A stretch of DNA of 64,000 nt from Epithemia pelagica (taxonomy: Eukaryota > Protista > Bacillariophyta). Shown here piece after piece: positions 7,969 to 23,322 of the stretch; the stretch's first letter is position 1; the number at the start of each line of letters is the position of its first letter. The notes beneath the pieces were generated by a model. That model did no database searches. It saw only the letters and a list, made by a program, of their open reading frames with translations, and was not told where the DNA came from. The translations under genes were made by a program, and so were the position numbers. The stretch lies in the NCBI GenBank assembly GCA_946965045.2, contig OX337239.1, positions 1,984,001 through 2,048,000 of the forward strand, read 5' to 3'.

Positions 7969-8962
7969 TTAACAGTTGTTCTCGTTATTGTCGTCTCCTT
8001 CAAAAAAGTTGGCATTGATAAAGACGGCAGTTCCCGACAAGAGTGCCTTTTGCTCCGTGGTGGCATTGTCTGGAAATTTGATATCAAACGCCTGGGCATC
8101 GGTAAAAATTTCCACCATGGCCGACTTGGGCTTCTTCATGATCAAGCCCACATAGGGTTGGTCACCACCGGTGTTGCCTTTCTGGTCGGCGGGGTACACG
8201 CGGAAGGAAACTTTACAACATCCCTTGCGCGTACAAGGGTTGCCTTCGGCGCCACAATTGACACAACAACCACCACAACATGTTGGTTGATGGAGGATAT
8301 AAAGTGGCTCTTGGTTGTAGTCGGAAATCGTAAAGGTTGGAATGCAATAGTAGTACTTCTCTTGGATGGATCCCAGCTCTTGTCCACCCGAAGAAATGGT
8401 GGCAATTTGATAACAACAGCACTTGCACGAGCCCATGCAACATTTACAAGGACGATCTACAGTGAGAATCTCTGCATCCGTGTTCAACTCTTTGACTTGC
8501 ATTTTGAACCTGAAAACATGACACGGCACACAAAGAAATGAGACGGAGGTGCACGACTTGCTCTCAGTGTTCGTCGCACGGAGACAAAGCAAACGTACGG
8601 GTGACAAGGAGCACACCAGAATCGGCAGCAGCAGCTGGCGTCTTCCAAGGAATGAGCAAACTGCGTTTCTCCAATGAACCATTTGAATTCGGTCCGAGCT
8701 TCGCATCCGCAGCACTCCTGGAGCCACCCACGACGGGTCTGTTTGAGGGCAACGATCCCATTCAAGAAATTCACACACAAAAATGGGTGAGATCATTCTT
8801 CCGAAACGAAAAGACGTATTTACGGTTTTGGTCCTCCTATCAACACTAGAGTGTCTGTCGAATTTACTATGGTCGCACCTGTCGAATTTCAATCTCCTTT
8901 GGTTCCGCAAAGTGTGCCTTCATGGAATCCGATCCACGGTCCATCTTCTGGGCTGTCGTCAT
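7969..8962 (-). CDS. Phospholipid scramblase family protein, 254 aa; exons 8962-8879, 8738-8599, 8509-7969
   Basis: Cys-rich scramblase-type motifs (QTRRGWLQECCGCEA, EDASCCCRFWC, VDRPCKCC, FTDAQAFDIKFP, EQKALLSG); GT-AG introns 8878-8739 and 8598-8510 restore one frame of 765 nt. Confidence 0.85.
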
Positions 8963-9062
8963 CTTCAACGTTGATGTAGCAAGCGAGGGTTGTATCTCTT
9001 CGTTGTATCTCTGCCTATTGCTTACGAATACGGTTGGTTTGTGAAGCAAAATGCCGCGAGTT

Positions 9063-9276
9063 TGTTGAAACACAACTCCGGTCGTACCGTACAAGTAACC
9101 ACTAGAGATGATCTCGTGTTATTTTAAAAAGAATGAGCCTCCTCTAGGCTCATTTGTTTGTTTCGCCTCGATCTTTTGCCTATGACTCTGACGTGTCACC
9201 AAAGTCCATTGGGCCTTTTCCTCTTCAGTCGCACTTTTCGTTTCCTTTGCCTTACTCGCATCCACTTGTCCTAACA
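9063..9276 (-). repeat. 3' LTR of Copia-1
   Basis: Direct repeat of 14726-14939. Confidence 0.97.
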
Positions 9277-12200
9277 CACTCCTTCGCGAGGAATGGTATT
9301 TACTAGTTCTCGGGATATTCATTAGGGCATCACGAAAAGTATAGAAGATGGATCCTTGCAACGGCTTCGTGTGGAAGTCAGCGATCATTTCTTCAGTCGG
9401 GCAATATTCAATTCGTAAGTCTTTCTTGTCAACACGATCCTTGATATAGAAATATCTGATGTTGATATGTTTTGTTCGTTTGCTGCTTGAAGCACGTCCA
9501 TTTTTCTCGAGCAAGATGGTACTCTCGTTATCTTGATACAAGATCACGTCCTTTATTGGATAGCCTTGGGCCTCCATAAATTGCTTACTCCACATGATCA
9601 ATGGAAGTCCATCGTGGACCCCAATTAGTTCGCTTTCAGTCGAACTTCTGGCAACTAATTTTTGCTTGCTTGACATGCTCAGAGCAGCCCCTTGTCCCAT
9701 TGACATGACTGCTCCAGTATGTCCACGCATGTTTGGATGAATTGCGTATGACGCATCAATCCACCATTTGACAATGCCACTCCCATCACAGTTGAGGCGT
9801 AACAGGAGGTCTTTTGTCGACTGCAGGTATTTCATCAGTCGGGAGAGTTTCCTCCAGTCCTCCTCAGTCGGCTCAGAAACTCGAGTACTCAAGAAAGCCA
9901 GAGTTGCTCTCAAATCAGGTCGTGCCCGTTGGGCCAAATACATGAGCTGCATAGTGAGACTATGGAAATAGTCGGCTTGGTCTTGTTTCAGTTTTGGGAA
10001 CTCTTCTGTCACCATGAAGAGATGATTAGCTGCTGGTGTCAAGGCTTTGCCATGAAATTCCTTTGGCGCTTCCTCAATCAATCCTTGGATGTATAATTGC
10101 ATATCGACCATAAGGGTACCGGGCTCACTAAAGTCCAACCACATTCCCAGATAATCATGACGCTTGCCACGTGAAATGGACAGTTCACCAAGGGTGACAA
10201 AAGTGTTCTTCAAATCCTCGATGATTTGCGTTACCACGGCAGGATCTTTGTGAGAGATCTTAAGATTGTCCACATGCCAGGTAAGAGTACACTGATGGCC
10301 GTTGATTGTTTTGTTTGCCACACAAGAATCGTATGGATTAATCTCGAAGCCCCAGCTTTTCACAACACTTGTGAGCTTCTCCCAAAATAGTCTTGCTCCT
10401 CTGAGTGTACCGTATAGAGCTCGTAGTAATTCCACATATATAACTTTTTCTCCACGTTCATATACCACAAATTGTTCATAGCTTTTGTCAATTTCGATCA
10501 AGAGGTCGACCATCAGTCCCGTTATGCGCATATAGACGTCCTTGTCCATGATTACTTGCATAAATACACCTGGGATGTCAACTACTGCCACCTCTCGCTT
10601 CTCCATCGCGTCAACTATTGCCGTGATAAATACCGCCTCGGTTGATACTGTTGGTGAGACTGTGTCTTCCTTTGCAATATGACCCCGCTGCTTTCTACCG
10701 TCTGCACAACCACGACCTTTGATCTTCCCATTCCTTTTTCTCTTTAGGAACATCAAGTATCCTAAGGCTTGGCGAATTTGTTCTTTCGTAAGTTGGCTTT
10801 TGTGAATTGCCCAAATCACGTCCCGGTCATGAAGTTGTAGAACTTCTTTCTTTACTGCCGAGACTCCCAGATCTCCAAACATCCTCACTCCTTGTTTCAT
10901 ACCCATCTGTGGAGTTTCGTTGGTAGCGCTCGTCACATAGATATCATGGTCATATCTATGCGCGTAGCTACGTTCTCTATTTGTACGTAGATTGTATCGT
11001 CGTTCAGATGGGTCTCTGTCACCACTTGGTGCTGCAGTGGGTTCTGTTCTGGGTTCTGGTTCCGGGGCCGGCTAAGCTTGGTTCTCTGCTAACATGCTGT
11101 CTGCCACGGCTTGATCAACAAAATATTCTATATTTTGTTTGTCCTGTTGGTCAATCTCATTTGCCAATACAGGATTTTCATTGAGTTCTCCTTCATGATA
11201 CTGCTCCACTCCTGGATTTTCAGCTGGAGCATTGATCGGACCATCGAAAGGTTCTCCTTCTACTGATGGTTGGTCGAATACTTGATCATCGTTTTCCACA
11301 TCCTCCACTCCTTGATCCCCCACTCCTTGATTTTCCTCCATCTCCTCCATTGGATCACCTAATCCTTCCTCTTCCTCACCGATGACCTCCATACCCAATC
11401 CATGGTTTTCGTCTTCCTCGTCTACCTCTTCATCCACTTCTTCTAGCTCGCCGTCAATATACTCTTCATCATACCTAAGATCAATATCTTGCTCTTCTTC
11501 GTCAACAATGAATTCCTCATCGTTTGATTCATCATCATCATCATCAAATTCGAGGGCTACAATTCGGTTGTCACGGTTGCCAAATGCCAAATTAGGGTAC
11601 CGATCTTGCGCATTGGTTAAGTCATACACGCGTTTTTCGATGCCTTCAGGCATTGGCACAATTGTTGCATGATTCCTGTTGATGATTCGGCCAGTGACCA
11701 GGCTCATGAAGTAGTATCCTCCCTGGCGGTTCCCTGTAGGGCGAAGGGCAATTGCTCCCACTGTTCTTGGTCCCATGTTGTTTGAATGCTGCTCGTGGGT
11801 TTGGACGTACTGACCAAATTCAAATTTGCAGTGACGATAAAAGTCAATCATTTCCCCAGTTACGAGAGTTCTAGGACTGAGCGTGTTGGAAAGTCCTTGG
11901 GATGCTGGAAAAGCGTTCAGCCAATAACAAGCATACTTTGCCAGTTCAATCACCATAATTCTTGGGACATAGCAAAATGGGAGTGTGTTATAAACACAAC
12001 GCATTCGTTCCTTGAGCGTTCGTATGTATCGCTCCACCTCACCAACATGTTCTTCTCTTGAAGTTGGGTTGAGCTTGATCCCAATGTTGTTGAGTGCTGC
12101 ATTGATCTCTGTCGTATCAAAGGCTCCATCAGCTAAGAGAACACGTGGTCTCAGATCTCCTCGTCGATATATTGACGCTACCTGTTTGATTGCCGTAATG

Positions 12201-14083
12201 ACAGACTGATCTGTAACTGACGGTAGGGTATGGACTGTCCCGAACTTGATATTCCGAGAGATGGTGACAAGGAAACCCACGCCATTAACATGCATGACAT
12301 CCATGCTGAGAACAACATCTTTGTGTTTGTCCGGGATGGGGACGTCAACGAGTTCTTGGAATTCCACTTTGTGTGGGCGTCTTCGCGTTGTTTTTCCTTT
12401 TAGGATCCCTATGTCGGGTCCAAAGATCTTCATTGCTAACTTGACATCATGACTCGTGAATGGGCAATTCGGAAGTAAATTTGAGTCCAGAATCTTACAC
12501 AGTTCACGGTCACTTGGTCGCCCTACTTTTGCTTGAAGCGACCGGACTCCCTTAGCACGATCAACTTCATTCTCCGTATATCCTTGCTTATTCTTAGACA
12601 CTGTGGTGACTAGGCATGATTTATTATCTGAATTACGCTCAGTATAATACAAGCCCTCCACCTGGTCTCCATTTTTGTCATATACTGTGAATGTATCGTT
12701 GTCGTCGTTGTACTTGATCTTGTGGGTTTTGGTAATGATATAGAATGAGAGGATGTTGACCCAGCCCCCTTGGTCAAACCAGACCGTTCCATAAGGGTCA
12801 AATTTGCCTTGAAGTGCTGTTGTCCTGGATCCCCCATGTCCCCGTATTGCTATCTGATGTGGGGCCTTGGATGGTTGATTTCGTAGAAGTTGTGGATTTG
12901 AAAAGACATGGACTGTTGCCTGGTTGTCGAGTAGGATCCAGGTCTTGGGTATCTTAGTCTGGGAAGTTGAAAGAGAAAGAACAGGTGAGGTTGGAATAAC
13001 AGTTGATATATGGTCAGTATGATTCAAACCTTGTTGATTGGCACCACCTTGGGTGTCGCCTTGATTTGTAGTTGTTGTTGAATCGGTGATGAATGCAACA
13101 CCAGTACCTCCATTTGCATTTGTCGTATCATGTTGACTCTGTTGCTCTTGTTTTCTTGACATTCTTGCATCCATGATTGCTCTAGCGTCGGCCAAGGTAG
13201 CTGGATAAATATTCTGTCCATCTAGGAAGTTGCTATGAAGATGAGCTTCATACTCCTTCTGCTGGCATGCTCGAATGAAGCGATTGGCGATCATTCTTTC
13301 TTGAGCTTCTATTGTATCCTTATCGATGGCGTTGCCAGCACGTCCATTTTTCTTAGCAATCTCTTCAACATAGGCAGCATCACAGAGGATAATTCCAAGC
13401 TCCTCTATCACTTTCACCTTCGCCTTAAACACTTCATAGAACTGGTGAACACTCTGACCGGGATGCCGTTTCAAGTGATAAAAGTCAAACCGGATTCGAT
13501 CCATTGCCATTCCAGTGTAAACTCTCCCAGGCTGGTAGGTGAAGGTAGTTGTTTTTATGAGCTGCAATAACTCAATCCCGTCTCTCTTGGTTTGAATTGA
13601 TCCAAAGTCTTTGTGAGCACGAAGTTTATCCTTGAGGAGTTCTGTTGACTGTCCCAATATAATACTATAGAGAGCAGATCGAAAATCTGCCACTGCATCT
13701 CGCTTATCCACCATTCGCTTGTACTCCATCTTCCAAGCTTCGACTTTGATGTTGGTTGCAGTAGGTCCTGGCTCCGTTGGTGCAACTGGGTCTTGTAGGT
13801 TGAGGTTCTCCACAGCGACTTGAAAATCTTGGTTGTATTTCGAGAACTTGGTTCCGATGTAACCGATTAATAGTTCTATGTTTTTTAAGTATCTCTTCGC
13901 TTGGGAGTCTTCAGCGTAATCGAAAATGCACCCTTTGAGCAAGGGCTCTTGTCCTTCAAATTTACTAGTTGTACCTCCTCGGTTGCGTCCGCCACGACCA
14001 CGGCCTTGGTTTCCTCTACCTCGTCCTTGTTGTCCTTGTCCTCGACCACCTGAGTCCACTTGGTCAGGTCTTGCTTTTGACAT
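9119..14083 (-). CDS. Copia-1 gag-pol polyprotein, interrupted by one in-frame TAG at 11072-11074
   Basis: Protease WILLDNQAT; integrase VLSMDVMHV / LLADGAF / EEHVGEVERYIRTLKER; RT (IKGRGCADG, RALYGTL, WHVDNLKISH); RNase H (WWIDASYA, SSTESELIG, ILYQDNES, MIADFHTKPL). ORFs 11072-14083 and 9119-10936 are in the same frame with only the TAG between them. Confidence 0.93.
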
Positions 14084-14085
14084 GC

Positions 14086-14688
14086 TTATGTTTCTCGGAT
14101 AAGTTTCACGTTGTTGAGTTGTCTTCGATGTTCTTCAAACTTGTTCGTGATTTTGTTCCAAATGCGGACCCAAACTTGCTCGCCCGACTTTGTGTATCTC
14201 ACGACAGTCCCTTGAAGATTGGAAATCCCCCTAGCGTGTTGCGCCAACTTGACAGGAGTGAGGACTGAGACTTTCGAGTGAACTTGAATCACGTCTTCTA
14301 CTTCTTGTTCTTCTGTGTCTTCAACTTCAACTGCTGCTGCTTCAGGTAGTAGTTCACCTCGTTCTGCTTGTCCCAAAAGATGTTCTTCTTCTTCAAGTGC
14401 TGTTCTGTATACTGCTCCTGAGTCGGCTTCAAACTGGTTTCTTGCTTCACGAAGCGCTTGTCTATACCGCGTATTCTCAGTAGCACGTTCCTCTTGATAG
14501 CGCTGTTCTAACTGAGCTTTATCAGCCCAGTACCGGCGGTCCACCGCACGAAGACGGTCTTCGTGGGCTTGTTCCAGCTGGCCGGTCTTGCGCTTTTCTG
14601 TTCGTTGGAGGCGTATAAAGGCAGTTATCAATCTTGAGATTGGACCATCCGCGGGACCTTCAGAACACGGGCCTTCACTATTTGACAT
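14086..14688 (-). CDS. Extra ORF (ORF0, 200 aa) upstream of gag in Copia-1: coiled coil plus a small beta-rich C-terminal domain
   Basis: ATG 38 nt after the 5' LTR; TAA only 2 nt before the gag ATG; heptad-like E/Q/R-rich middle. Confidence 0.7.
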   Translation of the reverse strand: MSNSEGPCSEGPADGPISRLITAFIRLQRTEKRKTGQLEQAHEDRLRAVDRRYWADKAQLEQRYQEERATENTRYRQALREARNQFEADSGAVYRTALEEEEHLLGQAERGELLPEAAAVEVEDTEEQEVEDVIQVHSKVSVLTPVKLAQHARGISNLQGTVVRYTKSGEQVWVRIWNKITNKFEEHRRQLNNVKLIRET

Positions 14689-14725
14689 TCAGTGTAAGCT
14701 GAATGATTGTTTTCTTTTTAAAATA

Positions 14726-14939
14726 TGTTGAAACACAACTCCGGTCGTACCGTACAAGTAACCACTAGAGATGATCTCGTGTTATTTTAAAAAGAATGAG
14801 CCTCCTCTTGGCTCATTTGTTTGTTTCGCCTCGATCTTGTGCCTATGACTCTGACGTGTCACCAAAGTCCATTGGGCCTTTTCCTCTTCAGTCGCACTTT
14901 TCGTTTCCTTTGCCTTACTCGCATCCACTTGTCCTAACA
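14726..14939 (-). repeat. 5' LTR of Copia-1
   Basis: Direct repeat of 9063-9276. Confidence 0.97.
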
Positions 14940-16663
14940 GAGTTCTTCGAAATGTACCCTCGGTATCGGTGACCATCTATTAATCGTATGTACGTCGTCC
15001 GCAAACTTTCTCCCCAATGGAGATTTTTTCTTGATTCAAATCCTATTTTCCATAAAAAATCAGAAAGGACACGCCGGCATTTCCGTGTCACGTTTGAGCG
15101 GCCCAGCGTGCATGACGGTTGCTGTTGGTAGTTGTGCACGAATCTCGCACACGCTCCCAAAAAAAAAAAACCTCCATTGCCAATGGCAATTGGCAATGGC
15201 ATGGTTTGTCAGCTACCATGCAACCCAGGTACGTCAAGAAAGACAGAGCTGCAACTAGGCTAAGGATGAGCATCTCAATAGTCCCTCCCTGTTGCTTTTG
15301 TTTGCATTCACCCCATGAGCCCCATTTTCTGGACTCGTTGCGACGTCCCACTTTTCACCAGTCCAATTTTGCTTGTTAGTCTTGATGATTGATACATTTG
15401 TAGCCCTTTTACTTTGATACTAGTCTAGGTAGAATTCCTGTTCTTTATTTTATCATAGGAGTAGGGGTAAATATCAATGTCAATGGTGTCCGGCTCTAGC
15501 AGGGATTCTCTTGCCTTTATTGTCTGCATTCTTCTCCTTCCTCGTCTTCACCATGAAGAAGATATAGCAAACACTACTCCTATGAATTGGTCTCAATGAG
15601 CAATAGCCTAGAAAGAAAGTGGTGACAATCAGCCTCATGCAGTTTGCCATCTTCAACTTGGATTACTACTCCAAGGAGTAAGAAGAAACCAAAGCGTCCC
15701 CTACCTAGTAGACAACGCAAACCATGGATGTGACAAGCCCCACAATGAGAAAATGGGCGAGAACACTACCAATCTATCAATTCTAAGAAGAAACAGTAGG
15801 CACAAACAACAACTGAAGGAACGACGCGCTTTGTCTACAGTCTACAATGATTCGGTCCGCGGTTCATGTGCCATGGCCGATGGTCTTACCGGTACCGTGA
15901 TAGGGCATAGGGCCCTCCAGAGTTTGCTCTCACGGTTTTTATGGGCCGTCTCTCGCGAGCGTCTGGAATTTGAATCGTGTTGATCAGAGGACGCCCGCCA
16001 ACCTTCAACTGTCACTTGCACGCCGGCCATTCTACATGACGATTTGGAGATTTTATGGGGGAGAAGGACAGAGTTCTGTGCGGACGACGTACATACGATT
16101 AATAGGTGGTCACTGGTCACCGATACAGACAGGGTGTGGAAGTTAAAACCGTATTTTTTGGAACTAATTTATATCCAATAAGTCTATTTCAAATAATACC
16201 ATAAATTAAATACCTTCTTTAAGTTGCATTCTCAATAACTGTGATTAGACTTACTCGTCATAATTGTATATCTTAATATCAACAAATAGAATTCAAATTT
16301 AACGCATGTAATAATAGGCTTCCAAATTAACTTCAACTTATCTACCCCTGACATTTATTCCATGCGAATGAACTTATTTTGGTTAATTGGTTCCACTATA
16401 TTTCCAACTTAATTTCTTATGCATTGTAATACTAACAAATTAACTACGAATTAACACTGACTGCCTCATTTCCAACTTGACACGAATTAAGTTGCAACTT
16501 TAAGGCCTAACTACCAGCAAAAAACATGCATTTCACCCATTGCGCGCCTCCTACTGCTGTGCATGTCCCTCGTCCCTTTCCTTACATCCAAGTATTTGAA
16601 AGCAAGAACAACCAACACTGCTGCACCTCCCTCGTATTACCTCCAACCCCAATTGGTTAGAAC

Positions 16664-18481
16664 ATGAATAGTCCCGACGACTGTTCTATATTACTAATGG
16701 AATCTTCCTGTACACCCATTATCACGCTTCACCAATCTCCATCATCTTTCATTGAGTTCATACTGGAAAACGAAAGATACTTTCTGACAGACTCGTTTCA
16801 TTCAACATTGAGAAGTATTAAAGATCACGTTCTTCTGTGGCTGAGTCAAAACAATGGAGAGATATACTACTACAACAATGATTTGGTTACTCACTGCAGC
16901 CATCCATGTTGTCTGCCGTACCAAATGGTTTTTTCGGACGCGATAAATGTCCTTTGCAAGCTGGTACACTGCGGGTTATATCCCAACCAAGATATTCAAT
17001 CCGGATCAGATGCTCCCTCTATTACATACAAGATGGAATCACAGCATAATGACACTCCGATTCTGATTCTACACGGGCAATGCCTTCCTACATTCAAGAT
17101 ACACAACAATGCCGACTTATCATCCATAACTTCATGTTTCAACACCAATCCATCATTGCCTGTCCGTGACTGTTTTCTCCTTTGGATGTCTCGTCATAAT
17201 GGCAGGGTCGCTGTTGCGGATGTTGATGACAAGGTGGTTTCATCACAATTTTACCCTACTTCTTTATCTCCCATCATCGTGGCCTTAAAAACGTTTCTCC
17301 TAAGTTTGATTAGACCACACGACAACGAGGCTGACCAAGTGTTAGAAGACACCATTACTACTTCCCCTGAACAACAGACACGACAGAACAGAACTGAATC
17401 ACCGACAGGAATTAGCCATGACCTTCCTTCGTCTCCTCCACCCAAACCCCATTCACCCAAGCCCCATTCTTTTTGCAGCCCAAGCAATATTCTTACGTGA
17501 CAAGACAAGAGTATATTCTCTCAAGCCCTTCTAGATGCCTCCAAAGCAAGAGTCGCAATCGAATATGACAATCAATCTCGTCACATGCCTGGCACCCCAG
17601 CTATCACCAAAGAATTCTCACTGCCATCATTGCCAGCCAAATTCCGAAAACCAACACCACAGACAATCAAAGCGAGACATTGTTTTGTAAACAATTTGCG
17701 CAAATTGCACTCATACTTCCAATCAAAAGGTCTCCATGCACCGAGAGATACATGGGAGTCTTGGATCGACGACGCCATTGATATGGAATATGAGTATGAG
17801 TTTGATCGAGGTTTCATGTGTTTGGTGGTTATTCTCATGAGTTCTAACACCTCTGATCAAATCTTATCAACGGTGGTACCTAGATTATTCCAGTCAGGGG
17901 TTATATCTGCTCCAGCAACCGTGGAAGTTGCCAAAATGTTTGGAATGAACGCGTTCTCAAGTCTGTTCTCAGAGAGTGGCCGGTTTTATCAATGTGCAGA
18001 GCGCATCGTAAACGCGGCAGACTATTTCATTCAACGACACGATGGTCGCATACCATCTAACATTTCCTTGCAAGAACTTCTTACTCTCCCTGGAGTAGGA
18101 TATAAAACGGCCGCAATCACCCTCGCGTACTCTTTTGGACGGGTTGAAGCAATCCCATCCGATGTGCATGTCATCAGATGCTGCCAATTACTTGGCTGGA
18201 TCCCCAAATCCTGTAACGATGGAATGCTCTGTTCCCTATTCTTGGAATCTTGGTTAGTCAACGAAGTATGGGGCGAGATAAATCCTCTTTTCGGTGCCAT
18301 TGGGCAAATTTTCAATGTGCCTGCATTGAAATTAGAGAGTTGCAGGATTCTGTCAGAGTATTCATCCAACTTTGATGGGAACGACGTTTACTCAACAATA
18401 TACAACACCGATGTTACACAGAAGCAAATGACCTACATGCATAATCAAGTCGTCACTATCATACGAGGCTATGGGAAGTGA
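16664..18481 (+). CDS. hAT cargo: duplicated unknown N-terminal domain fused to an endonuclease III-like HhH-GPD DNA glycosylase/AP lyase; one in-frame TGA at 17498-17500
   Basis: ILMSSNTSD, HhH ELLTLPGVGYKTA (catalytic Lys), IPSDVHVIR (catalytic Asp), LESWL...WGEINPLFGAIGQ; no CX6CX2CX5C Fe-S motif. ORFs 16664-17500 and 17585-18481 are in frame, and the 28 codons between them are open. Confidence 0.88.
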
Positions 18482-18632
18482 CGATAAAAAGTTTCCTACT
18501 AATATTGTTTTTCTTACTTGCGACTACGTCTGTCCTAAATGGTTAGTATTCGATATTCTTCGATTTCTGTTTCTTGTTTTCTGTTTTTTCAGTTGATGCT
18601 TCTCGTGTACTCTGTCATTATACATTCGGTCT

Positions 18633-21600
18633 TCAATCCTTGTTCAATCGACGTGATCGACGTGGTGAGTCGACTACATCACCATTACCGTTTTGATCAG
18701 TACGAGCTGGAGTGGATTGCCCGACTGACTGGACTGACTGGGATATTGCCGATGGAGCTGTCGTTGCGGCTGGAGCTGAAGCTGGAACTGGAGCAGTCGA
18801 TGCCCCAGTGTCAATAGACCGCCTTGCTTCTGTGGTTGAAGTTTGTGGAGGTGTTTCGCCTGTTGCAGTGTGTTCTGCCATTACCTGTTCAGGGGGCGCC
18901 TTCTTTGCTCCAAACCGCAAAGCCAACGATTGCTGTTTCATTTTACGTTTCTTCTGTGAAGAAAGGCCGGTTCTTTTGGTTTTACTTGTACTTCCCTTTC
19001 GCTTTTGGGAACTGGTCTGTACCTTTTTGGAAACTGATGCTGATTGCGAATGGAACGAAGAACTTTCCGTAACCTTACTTGCGTTTGCCAAACTCTGCTC
19101 ACCTGTGACTGATTGCTCTCCAGTGGCACAAAGTCGGAGACTTTGCTGCAGTGCTTGAAGTTTCTGAAGTTCCGTTTTCCGTTCTTCCACAACTTCGACC
19201 ATTCTCTCGTCCGAATCCTCATTATCTTTCTCTCCTTCAATCTTTCTGTTCAATGCTTCCATCTGTTCCCTATCAGTTTTATCCTGTACCAAGTCAATCA
19301 GTTCCACATCATCCCATTCTTCTACCTTTTCCTCGTTGTTATCGCCCAGTTTCTTGAATTTGTACGTTTGCCCGGACACTCCATTCTCTAAAGCACTTCC
19401 TTGAACGACAAATCCTTGTAGGTCCGTTGTTCCGTCTAAAATCTTCTCGAGCCGTCCTAGATCACCTTGTGTTGATGAATCACTCACTTCCACTATTTCA
19501 CGGGCAGTATCCATTACTTCGATAGCACCTTCAGGTGTAGAACCATCCTCCACTCCTGTCACAGCAGCAGCAGCAGCAGCAGCTCTACGACCTTTTGGTT
19601 TGGCTTTGGAAGTGGTTTTGCGTAACTCTGGTTTCACTTTGTTGTTAGACATGTCCTTTTCTCTTTCGCTTATTGTTTTCCGGATTGGACGACTTAGACT
19701 CTCGATGGTTCTCAATTCAAAAACCTTGTTGCCTTGTCGATTCATTAGTGGATTCCTGTCGAACCAAGAGCTGGTAGAAAAAACTCTCTCTTGGTACGCA
19801 TTCGTTGCTGGTTTCGAAATCCATATGATTGCACTAGGAAAAATCTTGGGAAACTGTGTGCGATTGGCCATCCACCACTGCATCACATTGAAGTATTGCG
19901 CCACGTCATGGAACTCTTCCTTGGCACAGGCGGTGAGAAACTCATCTTGCTCCTCATCTGTCCATGTCTGGGAACAAGCATCATACAGGGGTGTTGGAAA
20001 TTGTTGGATAAGGTCTGCCCATGAGTGCGAAACTACAGTCTCACAAAAATTAAGATAGGCACCGAATTCATTGTCACATTGCTTGTAGAATTTTGCTCTT
20101 TCTGTCTGATCTCGTCCATTCCCCGCTGCTTGGCCAGTCATAGAAGTTAGTGTGGCATGTTCTCTTTCTCTAGTCCTTCGGTGTGCTTTGAAAATGTTGA
20201 ATGCATCCATCACGTTAGCAACACTGTTTGTTGGTTGCGCTTGACTTGCGTCTCTTAAATCATCAGTACTGGCGTTGTCCTCCACATGAGGTGTTTCTTG
20301 AGTGCTTCCAGAGACAGAGGATGTTGACGATGTTGGAGATGTAAATTTTTGTACCACATCCATGACAAACTGGCGACGAATCCTTTTGATGTCGTTGTCG
20401 TCATAAACTTCTATGTCCTCCTTCATTATAGATGGTCCAAGATAGCACAGAAACGGGTGACCAAGCATGGCATGTTCTGCATGAACATCATCCCCTTCCA
20501 TCATGTAGGTCTTGTATTCGATCAAAATCCTATCAATCAGTTTCTTTGTTGATTCGAGTGCGTCATTATAGGGCAACATGGTCCGCTTCGATTGCAATGA
20601 GTGGATTGTTTCCGATGCATCCCAGGGTGTCACTCCTGGAGCATCTCTGTCCAGTACCAGAACCGGTATGCCCTTTTCTTTCATGATTTCAACACAAAAC
20701 TTGCTGTTGTAAATTTCCAACAAGGATCCTGCCGAGGCAGAAGGATCATCCACTTGCAGTGACATGGCACATTTCTTCAACGGTAATAGAACACCTTCAA
20801 ACTCTGCAAGGGCTTGCCATTCACTCTCTTTAGGGTACTTTGAGACAAAGTCCTTGTCTTTGTTTGTCTCAAAACTCTGTTGTTTTTGTATGCATCCATG
20901 GTATGCTTGTCCCGAAAGAGGTCATGCGTCATAATGATGCATCCTGTTACTCTGGTTGTATTAGGCATTTGGATCTTGATTATGTGTCGGTGATTCTTTT
21001 GAGCATATTCTTTAAGACGCTGGAATCGCTTGGGGGACCGGGAACTCATAAGCCAGGATGAGAACTTGAAAAAGATTTGATATATCTTCATAAAGGAAGG
21101 ATTGCTGTCGATTACTTCCCCATGCCTCTTGCGTACTGCTAGACCGGTGGCGTGTTTGAGTATCAATTCCGCTCTGTGCATGTTGCACTTTCCACCACTG
21201 TTGTTTCCAATAATGTATTTGCCAGCAAGGACGGCGGAATTAGTGTTGTCGTTCACAGAACTGCACAAGTCAGTCTGTGTGAACGAAACATTCTTCAGGA
21301 TTTTAGCCGTATGTTCCGCAACCTGGACAGCAGTATGCCCTTTGACATTAGCAAGACCAATGGGGATTTTATAGTTTTCACCGTTTCTTGGATCAGTGAA
21401 GACCAGGGTTATCCCCAAAATATCCTTGTTGTTGCCTTGCCATATGTCGTGACATATGGTGGCAAAGGCAATGGGCTTTCCGCATAACAAGGCATATGCG
21501 GCTCTAACCTTATTTCCCAACATGGTCACTGTTGCGACAAACTCATTGTATGATAGCAACCGCATTTTTGTTATTGCCTTGTTGCTGATTTCACAGTCCT

Positions 21601-22591
21601 TGGGAGAAAGTTTTGGGGCATTGGCTATTGCACATTGCAGTAGTTCTCGGAAAGAGTCTTTCTCCACAGTTCGAGCAGGGAATCCGTTGTCGTTCACAAA
21701 CCTGTATATGGCTTGGTGAAGTAAGGACTTGGCATCCGAGCGAGATACCATTGTTCCAGAGTATTGCTTCATCGTTGATTGTGTAGGATCATTATTGGTA
21801 TCATCATCTTTCAAACTTGCGCTGATGTGAGGGTGTTTAGCATCGTGGTGTTGCTTGATGTTGGAGGAAATGCCATCACCCAGGCCAAGAAGACACTCGT
21901 CAAGGGATTTATTGGGGTTCTCAAAACATAGAGGGCAGACAACCATCCTCTTGTTAATGGTCTTATAAGTGTCGTTTTCACGTATGTCATCTTCGGAGGC
22001 CTGTTCTAACATGTCAAAACAGCGAAGGAGACCCTCCATTCTCAAAAGACTGTCCTCGGAAATCTTGCCTTTGTGTGTCGACAGCTTCTTGTAGTCAATG
22101 TATCGAACCGTGCCCCAAAAAGATCTGTAGAAATTACGAAATTGTTTTGATCTTGCAATAGATTGGAACGAAATGAACGACTTTTCAAGTTTTATTTCTT
22201 CTCTTCGTTCGGGAGAAACAGATTCATCATCTTCGTTATCGTTGTCGTTGTTTTCGTTGTTCATATTGAGATTCACGTTGTCTGATGGATTGGTGTTGTT
22301 GTTAGTTGCACGGTTGTTGGGAACTGATGATTCCAAAGATGAAACAGAAGCTTGGCGAGATTGTCCTCTTGTGTTGGTAGGGGGCGGGGACATTGCAATG
22401 GTTGGAGGAGAAAGAGTTGAAACAGCCGGTGAATTATTGATACTCGTTATGACAAGCCCCAAGAGACCCTGAGACATGTGGGTGAGAAGTGAGAAGGTCT
22501 CTGGAGTCTCGAATATGCAAAACAGTTGGCGAGTTGGGAGTGGGAAGCACCTCTTTTCTATACAGACTGGAAACTGGCAACTGATGGTCAC
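18633..22591 (-). CDS. hAT transposase (about 1300 aa) with a 1-nt frameshift near 20880
   Basis: BED-like CPLC...IKQHHDAKH, D1 ICHDIW, D2 VNDNTN, CxxH KCNMH, C-terminal hATC dimerisation domain VMQWW...FPKIF...PATNAYQERVFS. Correcting the shift gives SFETNKDKDFVSKYPKESEWQALAEFEGVLLPLKKC. Confidence 0.92.
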
Positions 22592-23322
22592 TGGTCACTG
22601 GTCACTTCATTCATGTCTTGAATGAGTGATGAGTGGCGAAACATGTCGAGAGGCAAGAGGAATATCAAGCAACATGTGGAACGAAAGAAGTGATCTTAGT
22701 GTGTGTTAGGAAGTAATTGACTGGAGTATATTGTAGGCTGGTAGGAGAGAACAAAGAAAATTGGAAATAGATTTGTACAGAAAAGTTGGAACCGATGACT
22801 ATGAGAATAGACTTTTGATAGTAAGTCAGAGGAGAATTGCGAGGAAATTGAATGCAACTTAGGGTGAATGTAAAGTTGCAATTTATCGACGAAAAGTCAT
22901 AGAAATATTCGTTGCGAATGAATTATAGACGCGAAGTTGGTAAAAAAAGGGGGGAAATGAACTAAAAATGGTGAAAATGCAACTTTTTTGGTAAAAATAT
23001 TTGGAAATTGGAAAATGGCCAAGTTCAACTTCCACACCCTGGATACAGAGCCAACAGCAGGGTCAGCACATGCTCCGCGCGCCCGATAACATACCCCCTT
23101 AGAGAGATAACAACATCTCCCGGAAGCACGCAAAAGATTTTCCCGAACTGTGTTGATTTTGAGGGGAGCGGGACTGACAATAAAAATCTTCTCAACGGAC
23201 ATCTCCGGGATTCGGGTCATGTTTGGTGCGCGATCCCATATGTCAGCTTATCCCTATCGTAATCCCTACTGACTCCAGTAGAGGTAAAACTATTAAGAGA
23301 TGATAGAGAAGTAAACTAGGTA

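What the first reader, a model, noticed from the sequence alone, without database searches (positions are those of the whole stretch)
16130..23041. hAT transposon carrying its own endonuclease III-like (HhH-GPD) DNA glycosylase: candidate anti-silencing or anti-mutation system
Seen: exact TIRs and the 8-bp TSD bound a 6.9-kb element with a transposase on the minus strand and a convergent, intronless cargo ORF on the plus strand. The cargo C-terminal half keeps the HhH motif with catalytic Lys (LPGVGYKTA) and the catalytic Asp (SDVHV) but has lost the 4Fe-4S motif, so it differs from a typical host NTH1. Known: the HhH-GPD family includes the 5mC-excising DEMETER/ROS1 enzymes and the T:G mismatch glycosylases MBD4/MIG; diatom TEs carry CG methylation (DNMT5 in Phaeodactylum); TE-encoded anti-silencing factors exist (VANC of Arabidopsis VANDAL elements), and TET/JBP genes travel on fungal KDZ transposons. 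Inference: the element may excise 5mC or repair its deamination products on its own copies, or process transposition intermediates. I am not aware of a described hAT-glycosylase pairing.
Basis: partly seen in the sequence, partly recalled or inferred. Interest (0 to 1): 0.9.

Follow-up and report, generated by a model that had tools for sequence, protein, structure and literature searches.

The report
hAT transposon family with own glycosylase
This is a mutated, dead copy of a young, multi-copy cut-and-paste (hAT) jumping gene, probably in a diatom, whose whole old family carries a second conserved gene for an endonuclease III-type DNA base-removing enzyme; I found no paper describing this cargo, and its job (perhaps stripping silencing marks) is untested.

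Summary
Window 16130-23041 is a 6,912-bp hAT element with exact 15-bp TIRs and an 8-bp target-site duplication. It carries a minus-strand hAT transposase and a convergent plus-strand gene for an Nth/NTHL1-like HhH-GPD glycosylase. The glycosylase keeps the catalytic Lys and Asp and has no 4Fe-4S motif.

Corrections:
- The accessory gene is 605 codons (16664-18481), not the 298-codon ORF.
- This copy is dead. It has a TGA in place of an invariant Arg codon, a 1-bp frameshift in the transposase, and a D-to-N change in an invariant transposase motif.
- A 99.25 % identical intact copy lies at another locus.

The pairing is not a one-off capture. All eight complete elements I delimited, from at least six subfamilies, have the same layout and their own TSDs. 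About 37 clusters (at 50 % identity) form one clade apart from canonical NTH1. The glycosylase domain is under strong purifying selection.

The N-terminal half is an internally duplicated module with no detectable structural relative.

Function is untested. I favour excision of a modified base, most likely 5mC, as anti-silencing (about 0.35). The closest published analogue is the TET/JBP-carrying DNA transposons of fungi, which include hAT7.

The scan found this family many times before on other DNA of this genome.

The parts
16122..16129 (.). left target-site duplication GATACAGA
   Evidence: Identical 8-mer at 23042-23049.
16130..16144 (+). left terminal inverted repeat CAGGGTGTGGAAGTT
   Evidence: Exact inverted match to 23027-23041. 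0 of 100 shuffles gave two matches.
16145..16663 (.). left subterminal non-coding region, AT-rich, with repeated AAGTTG/CAACTT motifs (likely transposase-binding sites)
   Evidence: Six copies of the motif in 16221-16500, against three in the 6.2-kb interior. GC is 0.34. The binding role is inferred.
16664..18481 (+). accessory gene (ORF2), 605 codons, broken in this copy by an in-frame stop
   Evidence: One frame with a single TGA. The intact 605-aa version P0006 is encoded by sister copy L006. Reads of the same organism show C at 17498.
16685..17329 (+). N-terminal tandem-duplicated module of ORF2 (about residues 8-222), fold without known relative
   Evidence: AF2 pLDDT about 90 over residues 10-215. 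hhalign of repeat 1 against repeat 2 gives probability 97 %, E 5.6e-11. No fold match in PDB, AFDB clusters, VIA-wide or Atlas.
17498..17500 (+). TGA stop replacing the invariant Arg279 codon (CGA in sister copy and reads); a CpG-to-TpG change
   Evidence: T278 and R279 are invariant in alignment A2.
17495..17599 (+). conserved linker motif TR..(about 8)..S[RK]SK..I.Y....RH.PG.P.K between the N-terminal module and the glycosylase domain
   Evidence: Alignment A2 of 18 family members: T278, R279 and Y301 invariant; R306 and G310 nearly so. Function unknown.
17687..18343 (+). Nth/NTHL1-like HhH-GPD glycosylase/AP-lyase domain without iron-sulfur motif; Lys481 at 18104-18106, Asp500 at 18161-18163
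   Evidence: Pfam, PDB profile search, AF2 model plus Foldseek with NTHL1 and EndoIII on top at probability 1.0, motif scan.
18633..22477 (-). hAT transposase gene (ATG at 22477), about 1,282 codons when intact; frameshifted in this copy
   Evidence: Pfam PF05699. Hermes match at 1.7e-5. BED-like CxxC..H....H, HDIWQ, VNDNTN, C[D/N]MHRAEL and QERVFS motifs. The sister copy has one 1,282-aa ORF.
20881..20882 (-). site of a missing base (a G on the + strand in the sister copy and in all four runs) that shifts the transposase frame
21184..21184 (-). substitution turning the invariant CDMHRAEL motif into CNMHRAEL
18633..19700 (-). long acidic / Lys-Ser-rich C-terminal tail of the transposase beyond the dimerisation domain
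   Evidence: Present, with weakly conserved patches, in four of five subfamily transposases. Role unknown.
22478..23026 (.). right subterminal non-coding region with repeated AAGTTG/CAACTT motifs
   Evidence: Six copies of the motif in 22783-23031.
23027..23041 (-). right terminal inverted repeat
23042..23049 (.). right target-site duplication GATACAGA

Best explanation
Shown. The feature is a degenerate copy of a young, multi-copy, two-gene hAT DNA transposon. The family encodes a BED/DDE hAT transposase and, convergently, a 480-715-aa accessory protein. That protein has three parts: an internally duplicated N-terminal module of unknown fold, a conserved basic linker motif, and a C-terminal endonuclease III/NTHL1-type HhH-GPD domain. 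The domain retains the Schiff-base Lys and the catalytic Asp but has lost the 4Fe-4S loop. The accessory gene has travelled with the transposase since before the subfamilies diverged, and it is under purifying selection.

Inferred. The protein is an active bifunctional glycosylase/AP-lyase made by autonomous copies and acting in trans. The N-terminal module or the linker directs it to element DNA or to the transposase.

Most likely role, with a modest lead over the rivals. It excises a modified base, 5-methylcytosine or a derivative, from element DNA. Host base-excision repair then restores unmodified cytosine and methylation-based silencing is relieved. That would be functionally analogous to the TET/JBP genes of fungal DNA transposons and convergent with plant DME/ROS1.
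For: Element anatomy.

Mobility of the whole unit:
- L006 is 99.25 % identical from TIR to TIR, with different flanks and a different TSD.
- L011 and L012 differ at 3 of 6,798 bases at two loci.
- The PacBio-run contigs covering the element are only about 3.5 kb long and end within about 30 nt of the TIRs.

Family-wide pairing:
- 8 of 8 complete elements carry both genes.
- Each subfamily has 5-8 near-identical proteins on different long contigs.

One old clade:
- 37 clusters score below E 1e-30, followed by a gap down to 118 bits.
- The family is monophyletic, with SH-aLRT 99 for 28 rows.

Catalytic residues: G[VI]G[YH]KTA and the Asp are invariant, and no member has the 4-Cys motif.

Fold.

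Selection: glycosylase domain pN is 0.31-0.40 against a saturated pS of 0.72-0.90.

Co-divergence: the closest glycosylase pairs are also the closest transposase pairs.

Signs that the elements are methylation targets:
- CpG o/e is 0.65-0.78, against 0.87-0.98 in flanks and 0.72-0.79 in Copia ORFs.
- 6 of 20 substitutions derived in the window copy are CpG transitions.

Precedent: TET/JBP genes occur in eleven DNA-transposon lineages, hAT7 among them (PMC12730594).
Against: There are no biochemical or methylome data.

By sequence and fold the domain is nearest to NTHL1/EndoIII, enzymes for oxidised pyrimidines. No DME/ROS1 chain appeared in the PDB searches, even at E up to 10. Pfam found no DME-type flanking domains.

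From general knowledge, DME/ROS1 need their iron-sulfur cluster, and this family has lost it.

The repeated subterminal motifs that look like transposase-binding sites contain no CpG in five of six subfamilies. An Ac-like, methylation-gated binding site is therefore not evident.

The elements are no less CpG-depleted than Copia elements, so no lasting protection is visible.

The host's DNA methylation was not examined.
Confidence: 0.4

Rival explanations
1. Classical Nth-type repair for the element's benefit. The enzyme removes oxidised pyrimidines or AP sites, or supplies AP/dRP-lyase end-cleaning, at transposon ends, excision sites or the 8-nt integration gaps. This would raise the yield of successful transposition or limit damage to the host.
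For: The nearest relatives by sequence and fold are NTHL1 and EndoIII. Lys and Asp are kept, which implies lyase chemistry. Conservation shows the element needs the activity.
Against: From general knowledge of Hermes and Ac, hAT chemistry (flank hairpins, 3'-OH transfer) has no known need for a glycosylase. The host should already have NTH1. The long divergent stem and the extra N-terminal module point to a specialised role.
Confidence: 0.25
2. Anti-mutation enzyme. It excises T (or U) opposite G that arises from deamination of 5mC/C in methylated copies, keeping the element's genes intact.
For: The elements look methylated and deaminating: CpG is depleted and the window copy shows CpG transitions, including the stop that killed ORF2. 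Within the same HhH-GPD superfamily, Foldseek also lists the archaeal thymine-DNA glycosylase 1kea at lower rank.
Against: CpG depletion equals that of Copia elements, which lack such a gene. From general knowledge, known T:G glycosylases of this superfamily (MIG, MBD4) are monofunctional and lack the Lys that is invariant here. A trans-acting repair enzyme would benefit the whole genome, not the element specifically.
Confidence: 0.1
3. Targeting or regulatory partner rather than a repair enzyme. Like the Myb-like ORF2 of PIF/Harbinger, the accessory protein recruits or regulates the transposase at element ends or at chosen chromatin. The glycosylase domain would serve mainly as a DNA-binding or nicking module.
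For: A conserved N-terminal double module and a basic linker are attached to the enzyme. VIA-align gives faint resemblance to Myb/GARP tri-helical DNA-binding domains at Z 4.2. Subterminal repeats co-vary with the TIR in each subfamily.
Against: Z 4.2 is within the tool's stated noise. Invariant catalytic Lys and Asp across the family argue that catalysis itself is selected.
Confidence: 0.15
4. A neutral passenger gene captured once from the host, with no role for the element.
For: None beyond the general fact that DNA transposons sometimes capture host fragments.
Against: The gene is present in all complete elements examined, across subfamilies that differ by 40-50 % in both proteins. ORFs of 481-715 codons remain intact. 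Purifying selection is strong and the clade is monophyletic and distinct from canonical NTH1.
Confidence: 0.02

Closest known systems
TET/JBP-dioxygenase-carrying DNA transposons of fungi (KDZ, and the hAT7, Harbinger, IS3EU, EnSpm and Helitron lineages; PMC12730594)
   Same: These are cut-and-paste DNA transposons, a hAT lineage among them, that carry beside the transposase an enzyme acting on DNA bases and proposed to counter cytosine-methylation silencing.
   Different: The enzyme class differs: an Fe/2-oxoglutarate dioxygenase there, an HhH-GPD glycosylase/lyase here. In rusts the TET gene moves between transposon superfamilies. Here I saw the glycosylase only with one hAT lineage, always convergent to the transposase. 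hAT7 makes 7-bp TSDs and this family makes 8-bp TSDs. The hosts are fungi there and a probable diatom here.
Eukaryotic NTH1/NTHL1 and bacterial endonuclease III
   Same: Best sequence hits (9e-24 and 2.5e-18) and best fold hits. Same HhH motif with a Schiff-base Lys and an Asp about 19 residues downstream. Shares the eukaryote-type W-x-x-I-N segment before the cluster position.
   Different: No 4Fe-4S cysteine motif. GVG[YH]KTA replaces the eukaryotic GVGPKMA. A 340-460-residue N-terminal extension has a duplicated orphan module. The clade sits on a long stem, separately monophyletic, and is encoded inside a transposon.
Plant 5mC glycosylases DME/ROS1
   Same: Nth-derived bifunctional glycosylase/lyases with Lys and Asp. 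They are a plausible functional analogue if the anti-silencing reading is right.
   Different: No detectable specific sequence affinity. No iron-sulfur motif. No DME-type flanking domains in Pfam. Any 5mC activity here would be convergent.
Accessory proteins of other DNA transposons (VANC of VANDAL MULEs; Myb-like ORF2 of PIF/Harbinger)
   Same: A second element-encoded protein that is conserved family-wide and is needed for, or helps, the element. VANC causes sequence-specific loss of methylation.
   Different: Those proteins are not DNA-repair enzymes, and the transposon superfamilies differ.

Membership tests
hAT superfamily of DNA transposons | 8-bp target-site duplication | tested here: met
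   Perfect 8-bp TSDs in the window and in seven other elements.
hAT superfamily of DNA transposons | short terminal inverted repeats beginning CAG/YARNG | tested here: met
   The 15-bp TIR is CAGGGTGTGGAAGTT. TIRs of the CAGGGT.. type (CAGAGT.. on one arm of L011/L012) are found in all subfamilies.
hAT superfamily of DNA transposons | transposase with the hAT C-terminal dimerisation domain | tested here: met
   Pfam PF05699 at E 1e-6, 28.8 bits against a cut-off of 21.4. Hermes transposase chains match at 1.7e-5 over the same region.
hAT superfamily of DNA transposons | DDE catalytic triad and the C/DxxH motif in an RNase H-like core | tested here: inconclusive
   HDIWQ, VNDNTN, CDMHRAEL and QERVFS are invariant in a five-subfamily alignment. 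I assigned them to the catalytic residues by inspection and from memory of hAT motifs. No profile or structure confirmed the assignment.
hAT superfamily of DNA transposons | N-terminal BED-type zinc finger | tested here: inconclusive
   Invariant C181, C184, H210 and H215 fit CxxC...H....H. Pfam gave no zf-BED hit at E 0.01 or below.
Endonuclease III / NTH1 (HhH-GPD, bifunctional) | HhH-GPD fold with helix-hairpin-helix and catalytic Asp | tested here: met
   Profile against PDB: NTHL1 9e-24, EndoIII 2.5e-18. The AF2 model has Foldseek top hits NTHL1 and EndoIII at probability 1.0. The Asp is invariant. The single window ORF is borderline in Pfam, 26.0 against 26.2 bits.
Endonuclease III / NTH1 (HhH-GPD, bifunctional) | Schiff-base lysine in the HhH motif | tested here: met
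   G[VI]G[YH]KTA in 29 of the 30 family proteins in which the motif scan found the motif (one has GVKYKTA; the Lys is kept in all 30). The window has Lys481.
Endonuclease III / NTH1 (HhH-GPD, bifunctional) | C-terminal [4Fe-4S] loop Cys-X6-Cys-X2-Cys-X5-Cys | tested here: not met
   No such motif in any of the family members scanned. It is present in several canonical NTH1-like hits from the same search. No invariant Cys follows the GQ motif.
Endonuclease III / NTH1 (HhH-GPD, bifunctional) | glycosylase/lyase activity on oxidised pyrimidines | not testable with these tools
   Needs enzyme assays.
DME/ROS1 5-methylcytosine glycosylases | DME-specific flanking domains and iron-sulfur cluster around a split glycosylase domain | tested here: not met
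   Pfam found only HhH-GPD/HHH in the window ORFs. There is no 4-Cys motif. The glycosylase domain is contiguous. No DME/ROS1 chain appeared among PDB hits up to E 10; I did not verify that the PDB copy holds one.
DME/ROS1 5-methylcytosine glycosylases | excision of 5mC | not testable with these tools
   Needs enzyme assays and methylomes.
MIG/MBD4-type T:G mismatch glycosylases | monofunctional active site lacking the HhH lysine (from general knowledge) | tested here: not met
   The lysine is invariant in this family.
Two-gene hAT-glycosylase family (defined here) | glycosylase gene inside the TIRs, convergent to the transposase | tested here: met
   Window plus L001, L002, L006, L009, L010, L011 and L012. 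L005 has the same layout but is degenerate.

The most novel reading that the evidence does not exclude
The accessory protein is a transposon-borne active DNA demethylase. It would be an FeS-less Nth derivative that evolved excision of 5mC (or 5hmC/5hmU-type bases) independently of plant DME/ROS1. Its orphan N-terminal double module would aim it at its own element's DNA, so a cut-and-paste transposon could erase its own silencing marks by base excision.
Probability: 0.3. Interest if true: 0.85.

Novelty: new variant of a known kind. Interest (0 to 1): 0.7.

Why it matters
DNA transposons that carry their own enzymes for acting on DNA bases are rare. The known case is TET/JBP in fungi. A base-excision enzyme kept for a long time by a hAT family would be a second, chemically different answer to the same problem.

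It would give diatom biology a natural handle on DNA methylation and transposon control. Diatoms have no described 5mC glycosylase that I know of.

The enzyme is also of interest in its own right. It is a compact Nth-type glycosylase that does without the iron-sulfur cluster, fused to a domain with no structural relatives.

The family is young and intact in this genome: L011 and L012 differ at 3 bases. Activity, methylation and transposition can therefore be tested directly.

Tried and rejected
1. Introns as the cause of the split ORFs: rejected. The sister copy and the reads give continuous ORFs through a single base change and a single inserted base.

2. One-off capture or neutral passenger: rejected.

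3. Ac-like methylation-gated transposase binding: not supported. The repeated subterminal motifs (AAGTTG here) lack CpG in five of six subfamilies.

4. Identifying the N-terminal module: Pfam, Atlas features, Foldseek PDB, AFDB clusters, VIA-wide (best Z 4.2) and Atlas shape search all gave nothing usable.

5. JGI metagenome scan for longer contigs from other organisms: no confirmed hit.

6. RNA evidence: no run labelled RNA holds the element. Run X4 may be RNA: it has a 4,087-nt contig exactly spanning the transposase ORF at depth 35, while the glycosylase gene sits at depth about 2. Its kind is not on record.

7. Organism from a flanking plastid-pathway gene: it shows only a plastid-bearing eukaryote.

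8. The sister-lineage protein P0030 sits beside convergent ORFs on a 3.6-kb contig, but no DNA was served, so hAT identity could not be tested.

9. dN/dS as a number: synonymous sites are saturated, so only an upper bound can be given.

Full report
**Observation.** The 15-mer CAGGGTGTGGAAGTT occurs exactly twice in the window, inverted, at 16130-16144 and 23027-23041. No shuffle out of 100 gave two matches. It is flanked by the direct 8-mer GATACAGA at 16122-16129 and 23042-23049. Inside lie two minus-strand ORFs, 22591-20777 and 20780-18633. The second carries the hAT dimerisation domain, PF05699, E 1e-6. Two plus-strand ORFs in one frame, 16664-17500 and 17585-18481, are also present, and the second hits HhH-GPD at 26.0 bits against a cut-off of 26.2.

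**This copy is broken.**
- Translating 16130-18484 shows that a single TGA at 17498-17500 separates the two plus-strand ORFs. Homology to relatives continues upstream of the ATG at 17585.
- I laid Logan contigs of four runs of the same organism on 16600-22599. They show C instead of T at 17498 (CGA, Arg) and one extra G after 20881.
- With those natural variants the plus-strand gene is one 605-codon ORF. The transposase is then one ORF of about 1,319 codons counted from the GTG, or 1,282 from the ATG at 22477.
- The stop replaces Arg279, which is invariant in an 18-member alignment. It is a CpG-to-TpG change.
- A third change, at 21184, turns the invariant transposase motif CDMHRAEL into CNMHRAEL.
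- I could not verify the frameshift against reads unique to this locus, because the contigs are collapsed over copies.

**The whole unit moves.**
- Protein P0006 (605 aa) is encoded on locus L006, from ENA assembly ERZ21939226. That element is 99.25 % identical to the window from TIR to TIR. Similarity ends exactly at the TIRs, and the element has its own TSD, AGTAGAAT.
- L011 and L012, another subfamily, differ at 3 of 6,798 bases and sit at two loci with different TSDs. Transposition is therefore very recent.
- In the two PacBio-like runs the element is covered by two contigs of about 3.5 kb that stop within about 30 nt of the TIRs, while other contigs of those runs reach about 500 kb. This fits a repeat.

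**The pairing defines the family.**
- I delimited eight elements of 6.8-7.6 kb by TIR and perfect 8-bp TSD: the window, L001, L002, L006, L009, L010, L011 and L012. They represent at least six subfamilies, and all carry the accessory gene followed by a convergent hAT transposase. L005 is a degenerate ninth.
- An exhaustive profile search of 1.84 billion representatives found 37 clusters below E 1e-30 (138-460 bits). Scores then fall to 118 bits and below for ordinary Nth-like proteins.
- Most full-length members are 480-715 aa, with the glycosylase domain at the C-terminus.
- Ten clusters looked up at 90 % identity hold up to 8 near-identical members each, on many long contigs. The genome therefore holds dozens of copies.
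- Members also come from other samples: SRR28477675, SRR23447908, ERZ27267782, ERR11523665 and two JGI records named 'endonuclease III'. Those contigs are too short to show a transposase. One of them ends in a convergent Lys-rich ORF that resembles a transposase tail, which is weak evidence.

**The enzyme.**
- A family profile hits human NTHL1 at 9e-24 and endonuclease III at 2.5e-18. OGG1, MutY and AlkA-type chains follow far behind.
- The AF2 model (pLDDT 71; the core is 75-90) has NTHL1 and EndoIII as top Foldseek matches at probability 1.0.
- The HhH lysine (G[VI]G[YH]KTA) and the downstream Asp are invariant. No member has the Cys-X6-Cys-X2-Cys-X5-Cys motif, which several canonical hits from the same search do have.
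- In a maximum-likelihood tree of 84 domains the family is one clade, with SH-aLRT 99 for 28 rows and 93 with P0030 added. It sits on a long stem and is not nested among canonical NTH1-like proteins. This was the quick search mode, taxon labels are unknown and the tree is unrooted.
- Between subfamilies, synonymous sites are saturated (pS 0.72-0.90), while the glycosylase domain has pN 0.31-0.40. dN/dS is therefore well below about 0.25.
- The two closest glycosylase pairs (L001-L009 and L006-L002) are also the two closest transposase pairs. Both proteins span similar identity ranges, and Pearson r is 0.53 on non-independent pairs. This fits co-inheritance since before the subfamilies split.

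**The N-terminal half.**
- Alignment A2 shows two copies of a module of about 100 residues with a W-[LFM]-[IV]-R signature. It is followed by a low-complexity spacer and the conserved motif TR...S[RK]SK..I.Y....RH.PG.P.K.
- hhalign of repeat 1 against repeat 2 gives 97 % probability, E 5.6e-11.
- AF2 models residues 10-215 at pLDDT about 90.
- No relative was found by Pfam, Atlas features, Foldseek against PDB, AFDB clusters, VIA-wide (best Z 4.2, Myb/GARP-like helices, inside the tool's noise) or Atlas shapes.

**The transposase.** Five subfamily transposases are 32-54 % identical to the L006 transposase, the first row of the alignment. They share an invariant CxxC...H....H, HDIWQ, VNDNTN, CDMHRAEL and QERVFS, plus the dimerisation region that matches Hermes. 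Four of the five have a long acidic and Lys/Ser-rich tail beyond that region.

**Clues to function.**
- CpG o/e is 0.65-0.78 in the eight elements, 0.87-0.98 in their flanks and 0.72-0.79 in two Copia ORFs. The elements look like methylated, deaminating DNA, and no less so than retrotransposons that lack the gene.
- I polarised differences with a third sequence. Six of 20 changes derived in the window copy are CpG transitions, against 0 of 10 in L006. The numbers are small.
- Repeated subterminal hexamers (AAGTTG here: 12 in the outer regions, 3 inside) follow the inner half of each subfamily's TIR. They lack CpG in five of six subfamilies.
- None of this decides the substrate.

**Literature.** Four full-text searches found no transposon-encoded HhH-GPD glycosylase. 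The nearest analogue is the set of fungal DNA transposons that carry TET/JBP dioxygenases. These come from eleven lineages, including hAT7 in rusts (PMC12730594).

**Organism.** The scan index lists 23 sequence pieces and 986 windows (about 63 Mb) for this genome. The holders are two equal long-contig runs plus one short-contig run from 2022. This matches the published Epithemia pelagica assembly: 60.3 Mb, 21 scaffolds plus two organelle genomes, two PacBio runs and one Hi-C run (PMC11167328). The match is circumstantial, and I did not test it by sequence.

**Earlier scan notes.** After my own analysis I found that the scan had already reported this family many times on other DNA of the same genome, with concordant conclusions. 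I count these as leads, not as support.

**Verdict.** The anatomy is secure. The function is inferred. I rank modified-base (5mC) excision for anti-silencing first, at roughly 0.35-0.4. Nth-type repair in aid of transposition follows at 0.25, a targeting or regulatory partner at 0.15, T:G anti-mutation at 0.1, and neutral cargo at about 0.02.

Noticed in passing
window 16130-23041 compared with L006 7467-14392: Of 20 substitutions derived in the broken window copy, 6 are CpG-to-TpG/CpA, including the stop in ORF2 and the D-to-N change in the transposase. None of the 10 derived in the intact L006 copy is a CpG transition. This may reflect different methylation histories of the two loci, but the numbers are small.
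   Followed up: partly
window 18511-22593 (run X4): One 4,087-nt contig at depth 35 spans exactly the transposase ORF plus about 120 nt beyond its stop. The glycosylase gene is covered only by 150-205-nt pieces at depth about 2. If X4 is RNA-seq, the transposase is transcribed unspliced and far more strongly than ORF2. The run's kind is not on record.
   Followed up: no
window 18633-19700 (-), and L006, L009, L010, L011: The transposases carry a tail of about 350 residues, acidic then Lys/Ser-rich, beyond the hAT dimerisation domain. It has weakly conserved patches (G..Y.F, D.VE..DL, KKAPP). This is unusual for hAT transposases, and its role is unknown.
   Followed up: no
proteins P0038, P0042, P0040, P0030: More distant FeS-less Nth-like proteins share the RD.W..W motif. 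P0038 and P0042 contain two such domains in tandem. P0030 (sample ERR11523665) is followed by convergent ORFs on a 3.6-kb contig. These may be further mobile-element lineages.
   Followed up: partly
window 19554-19592: A CAG/GCT (poly-Ala) repeat in the transposase tail varies by one unit between copies and breaks the short-read and Logan contigs.
   Followed up: no
window 14712-14796 and 8000-16000: The element sits next to a Copia-type retrotransposon noted earlier by the scan. CpG o/e is 0.77-0.81 across 8001-16000, as low as in the hAT element.
   Followed up: no
TSDs of eight elements: T at position 2 in 4 of 8 and A at position 7 in 5 of 8 target duplications. This is weakly consistent with the hAT target consensus nTnnnnAn, which I recall from general knowledge.
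   Followed up: no
L002 9224-9980: The glycosylase gene of the L002 element is interrupted by about 750 bp that carries a minus-strand 211-aa ORF. It may be a nested insertion or a rearrangement.
   Followed up: no
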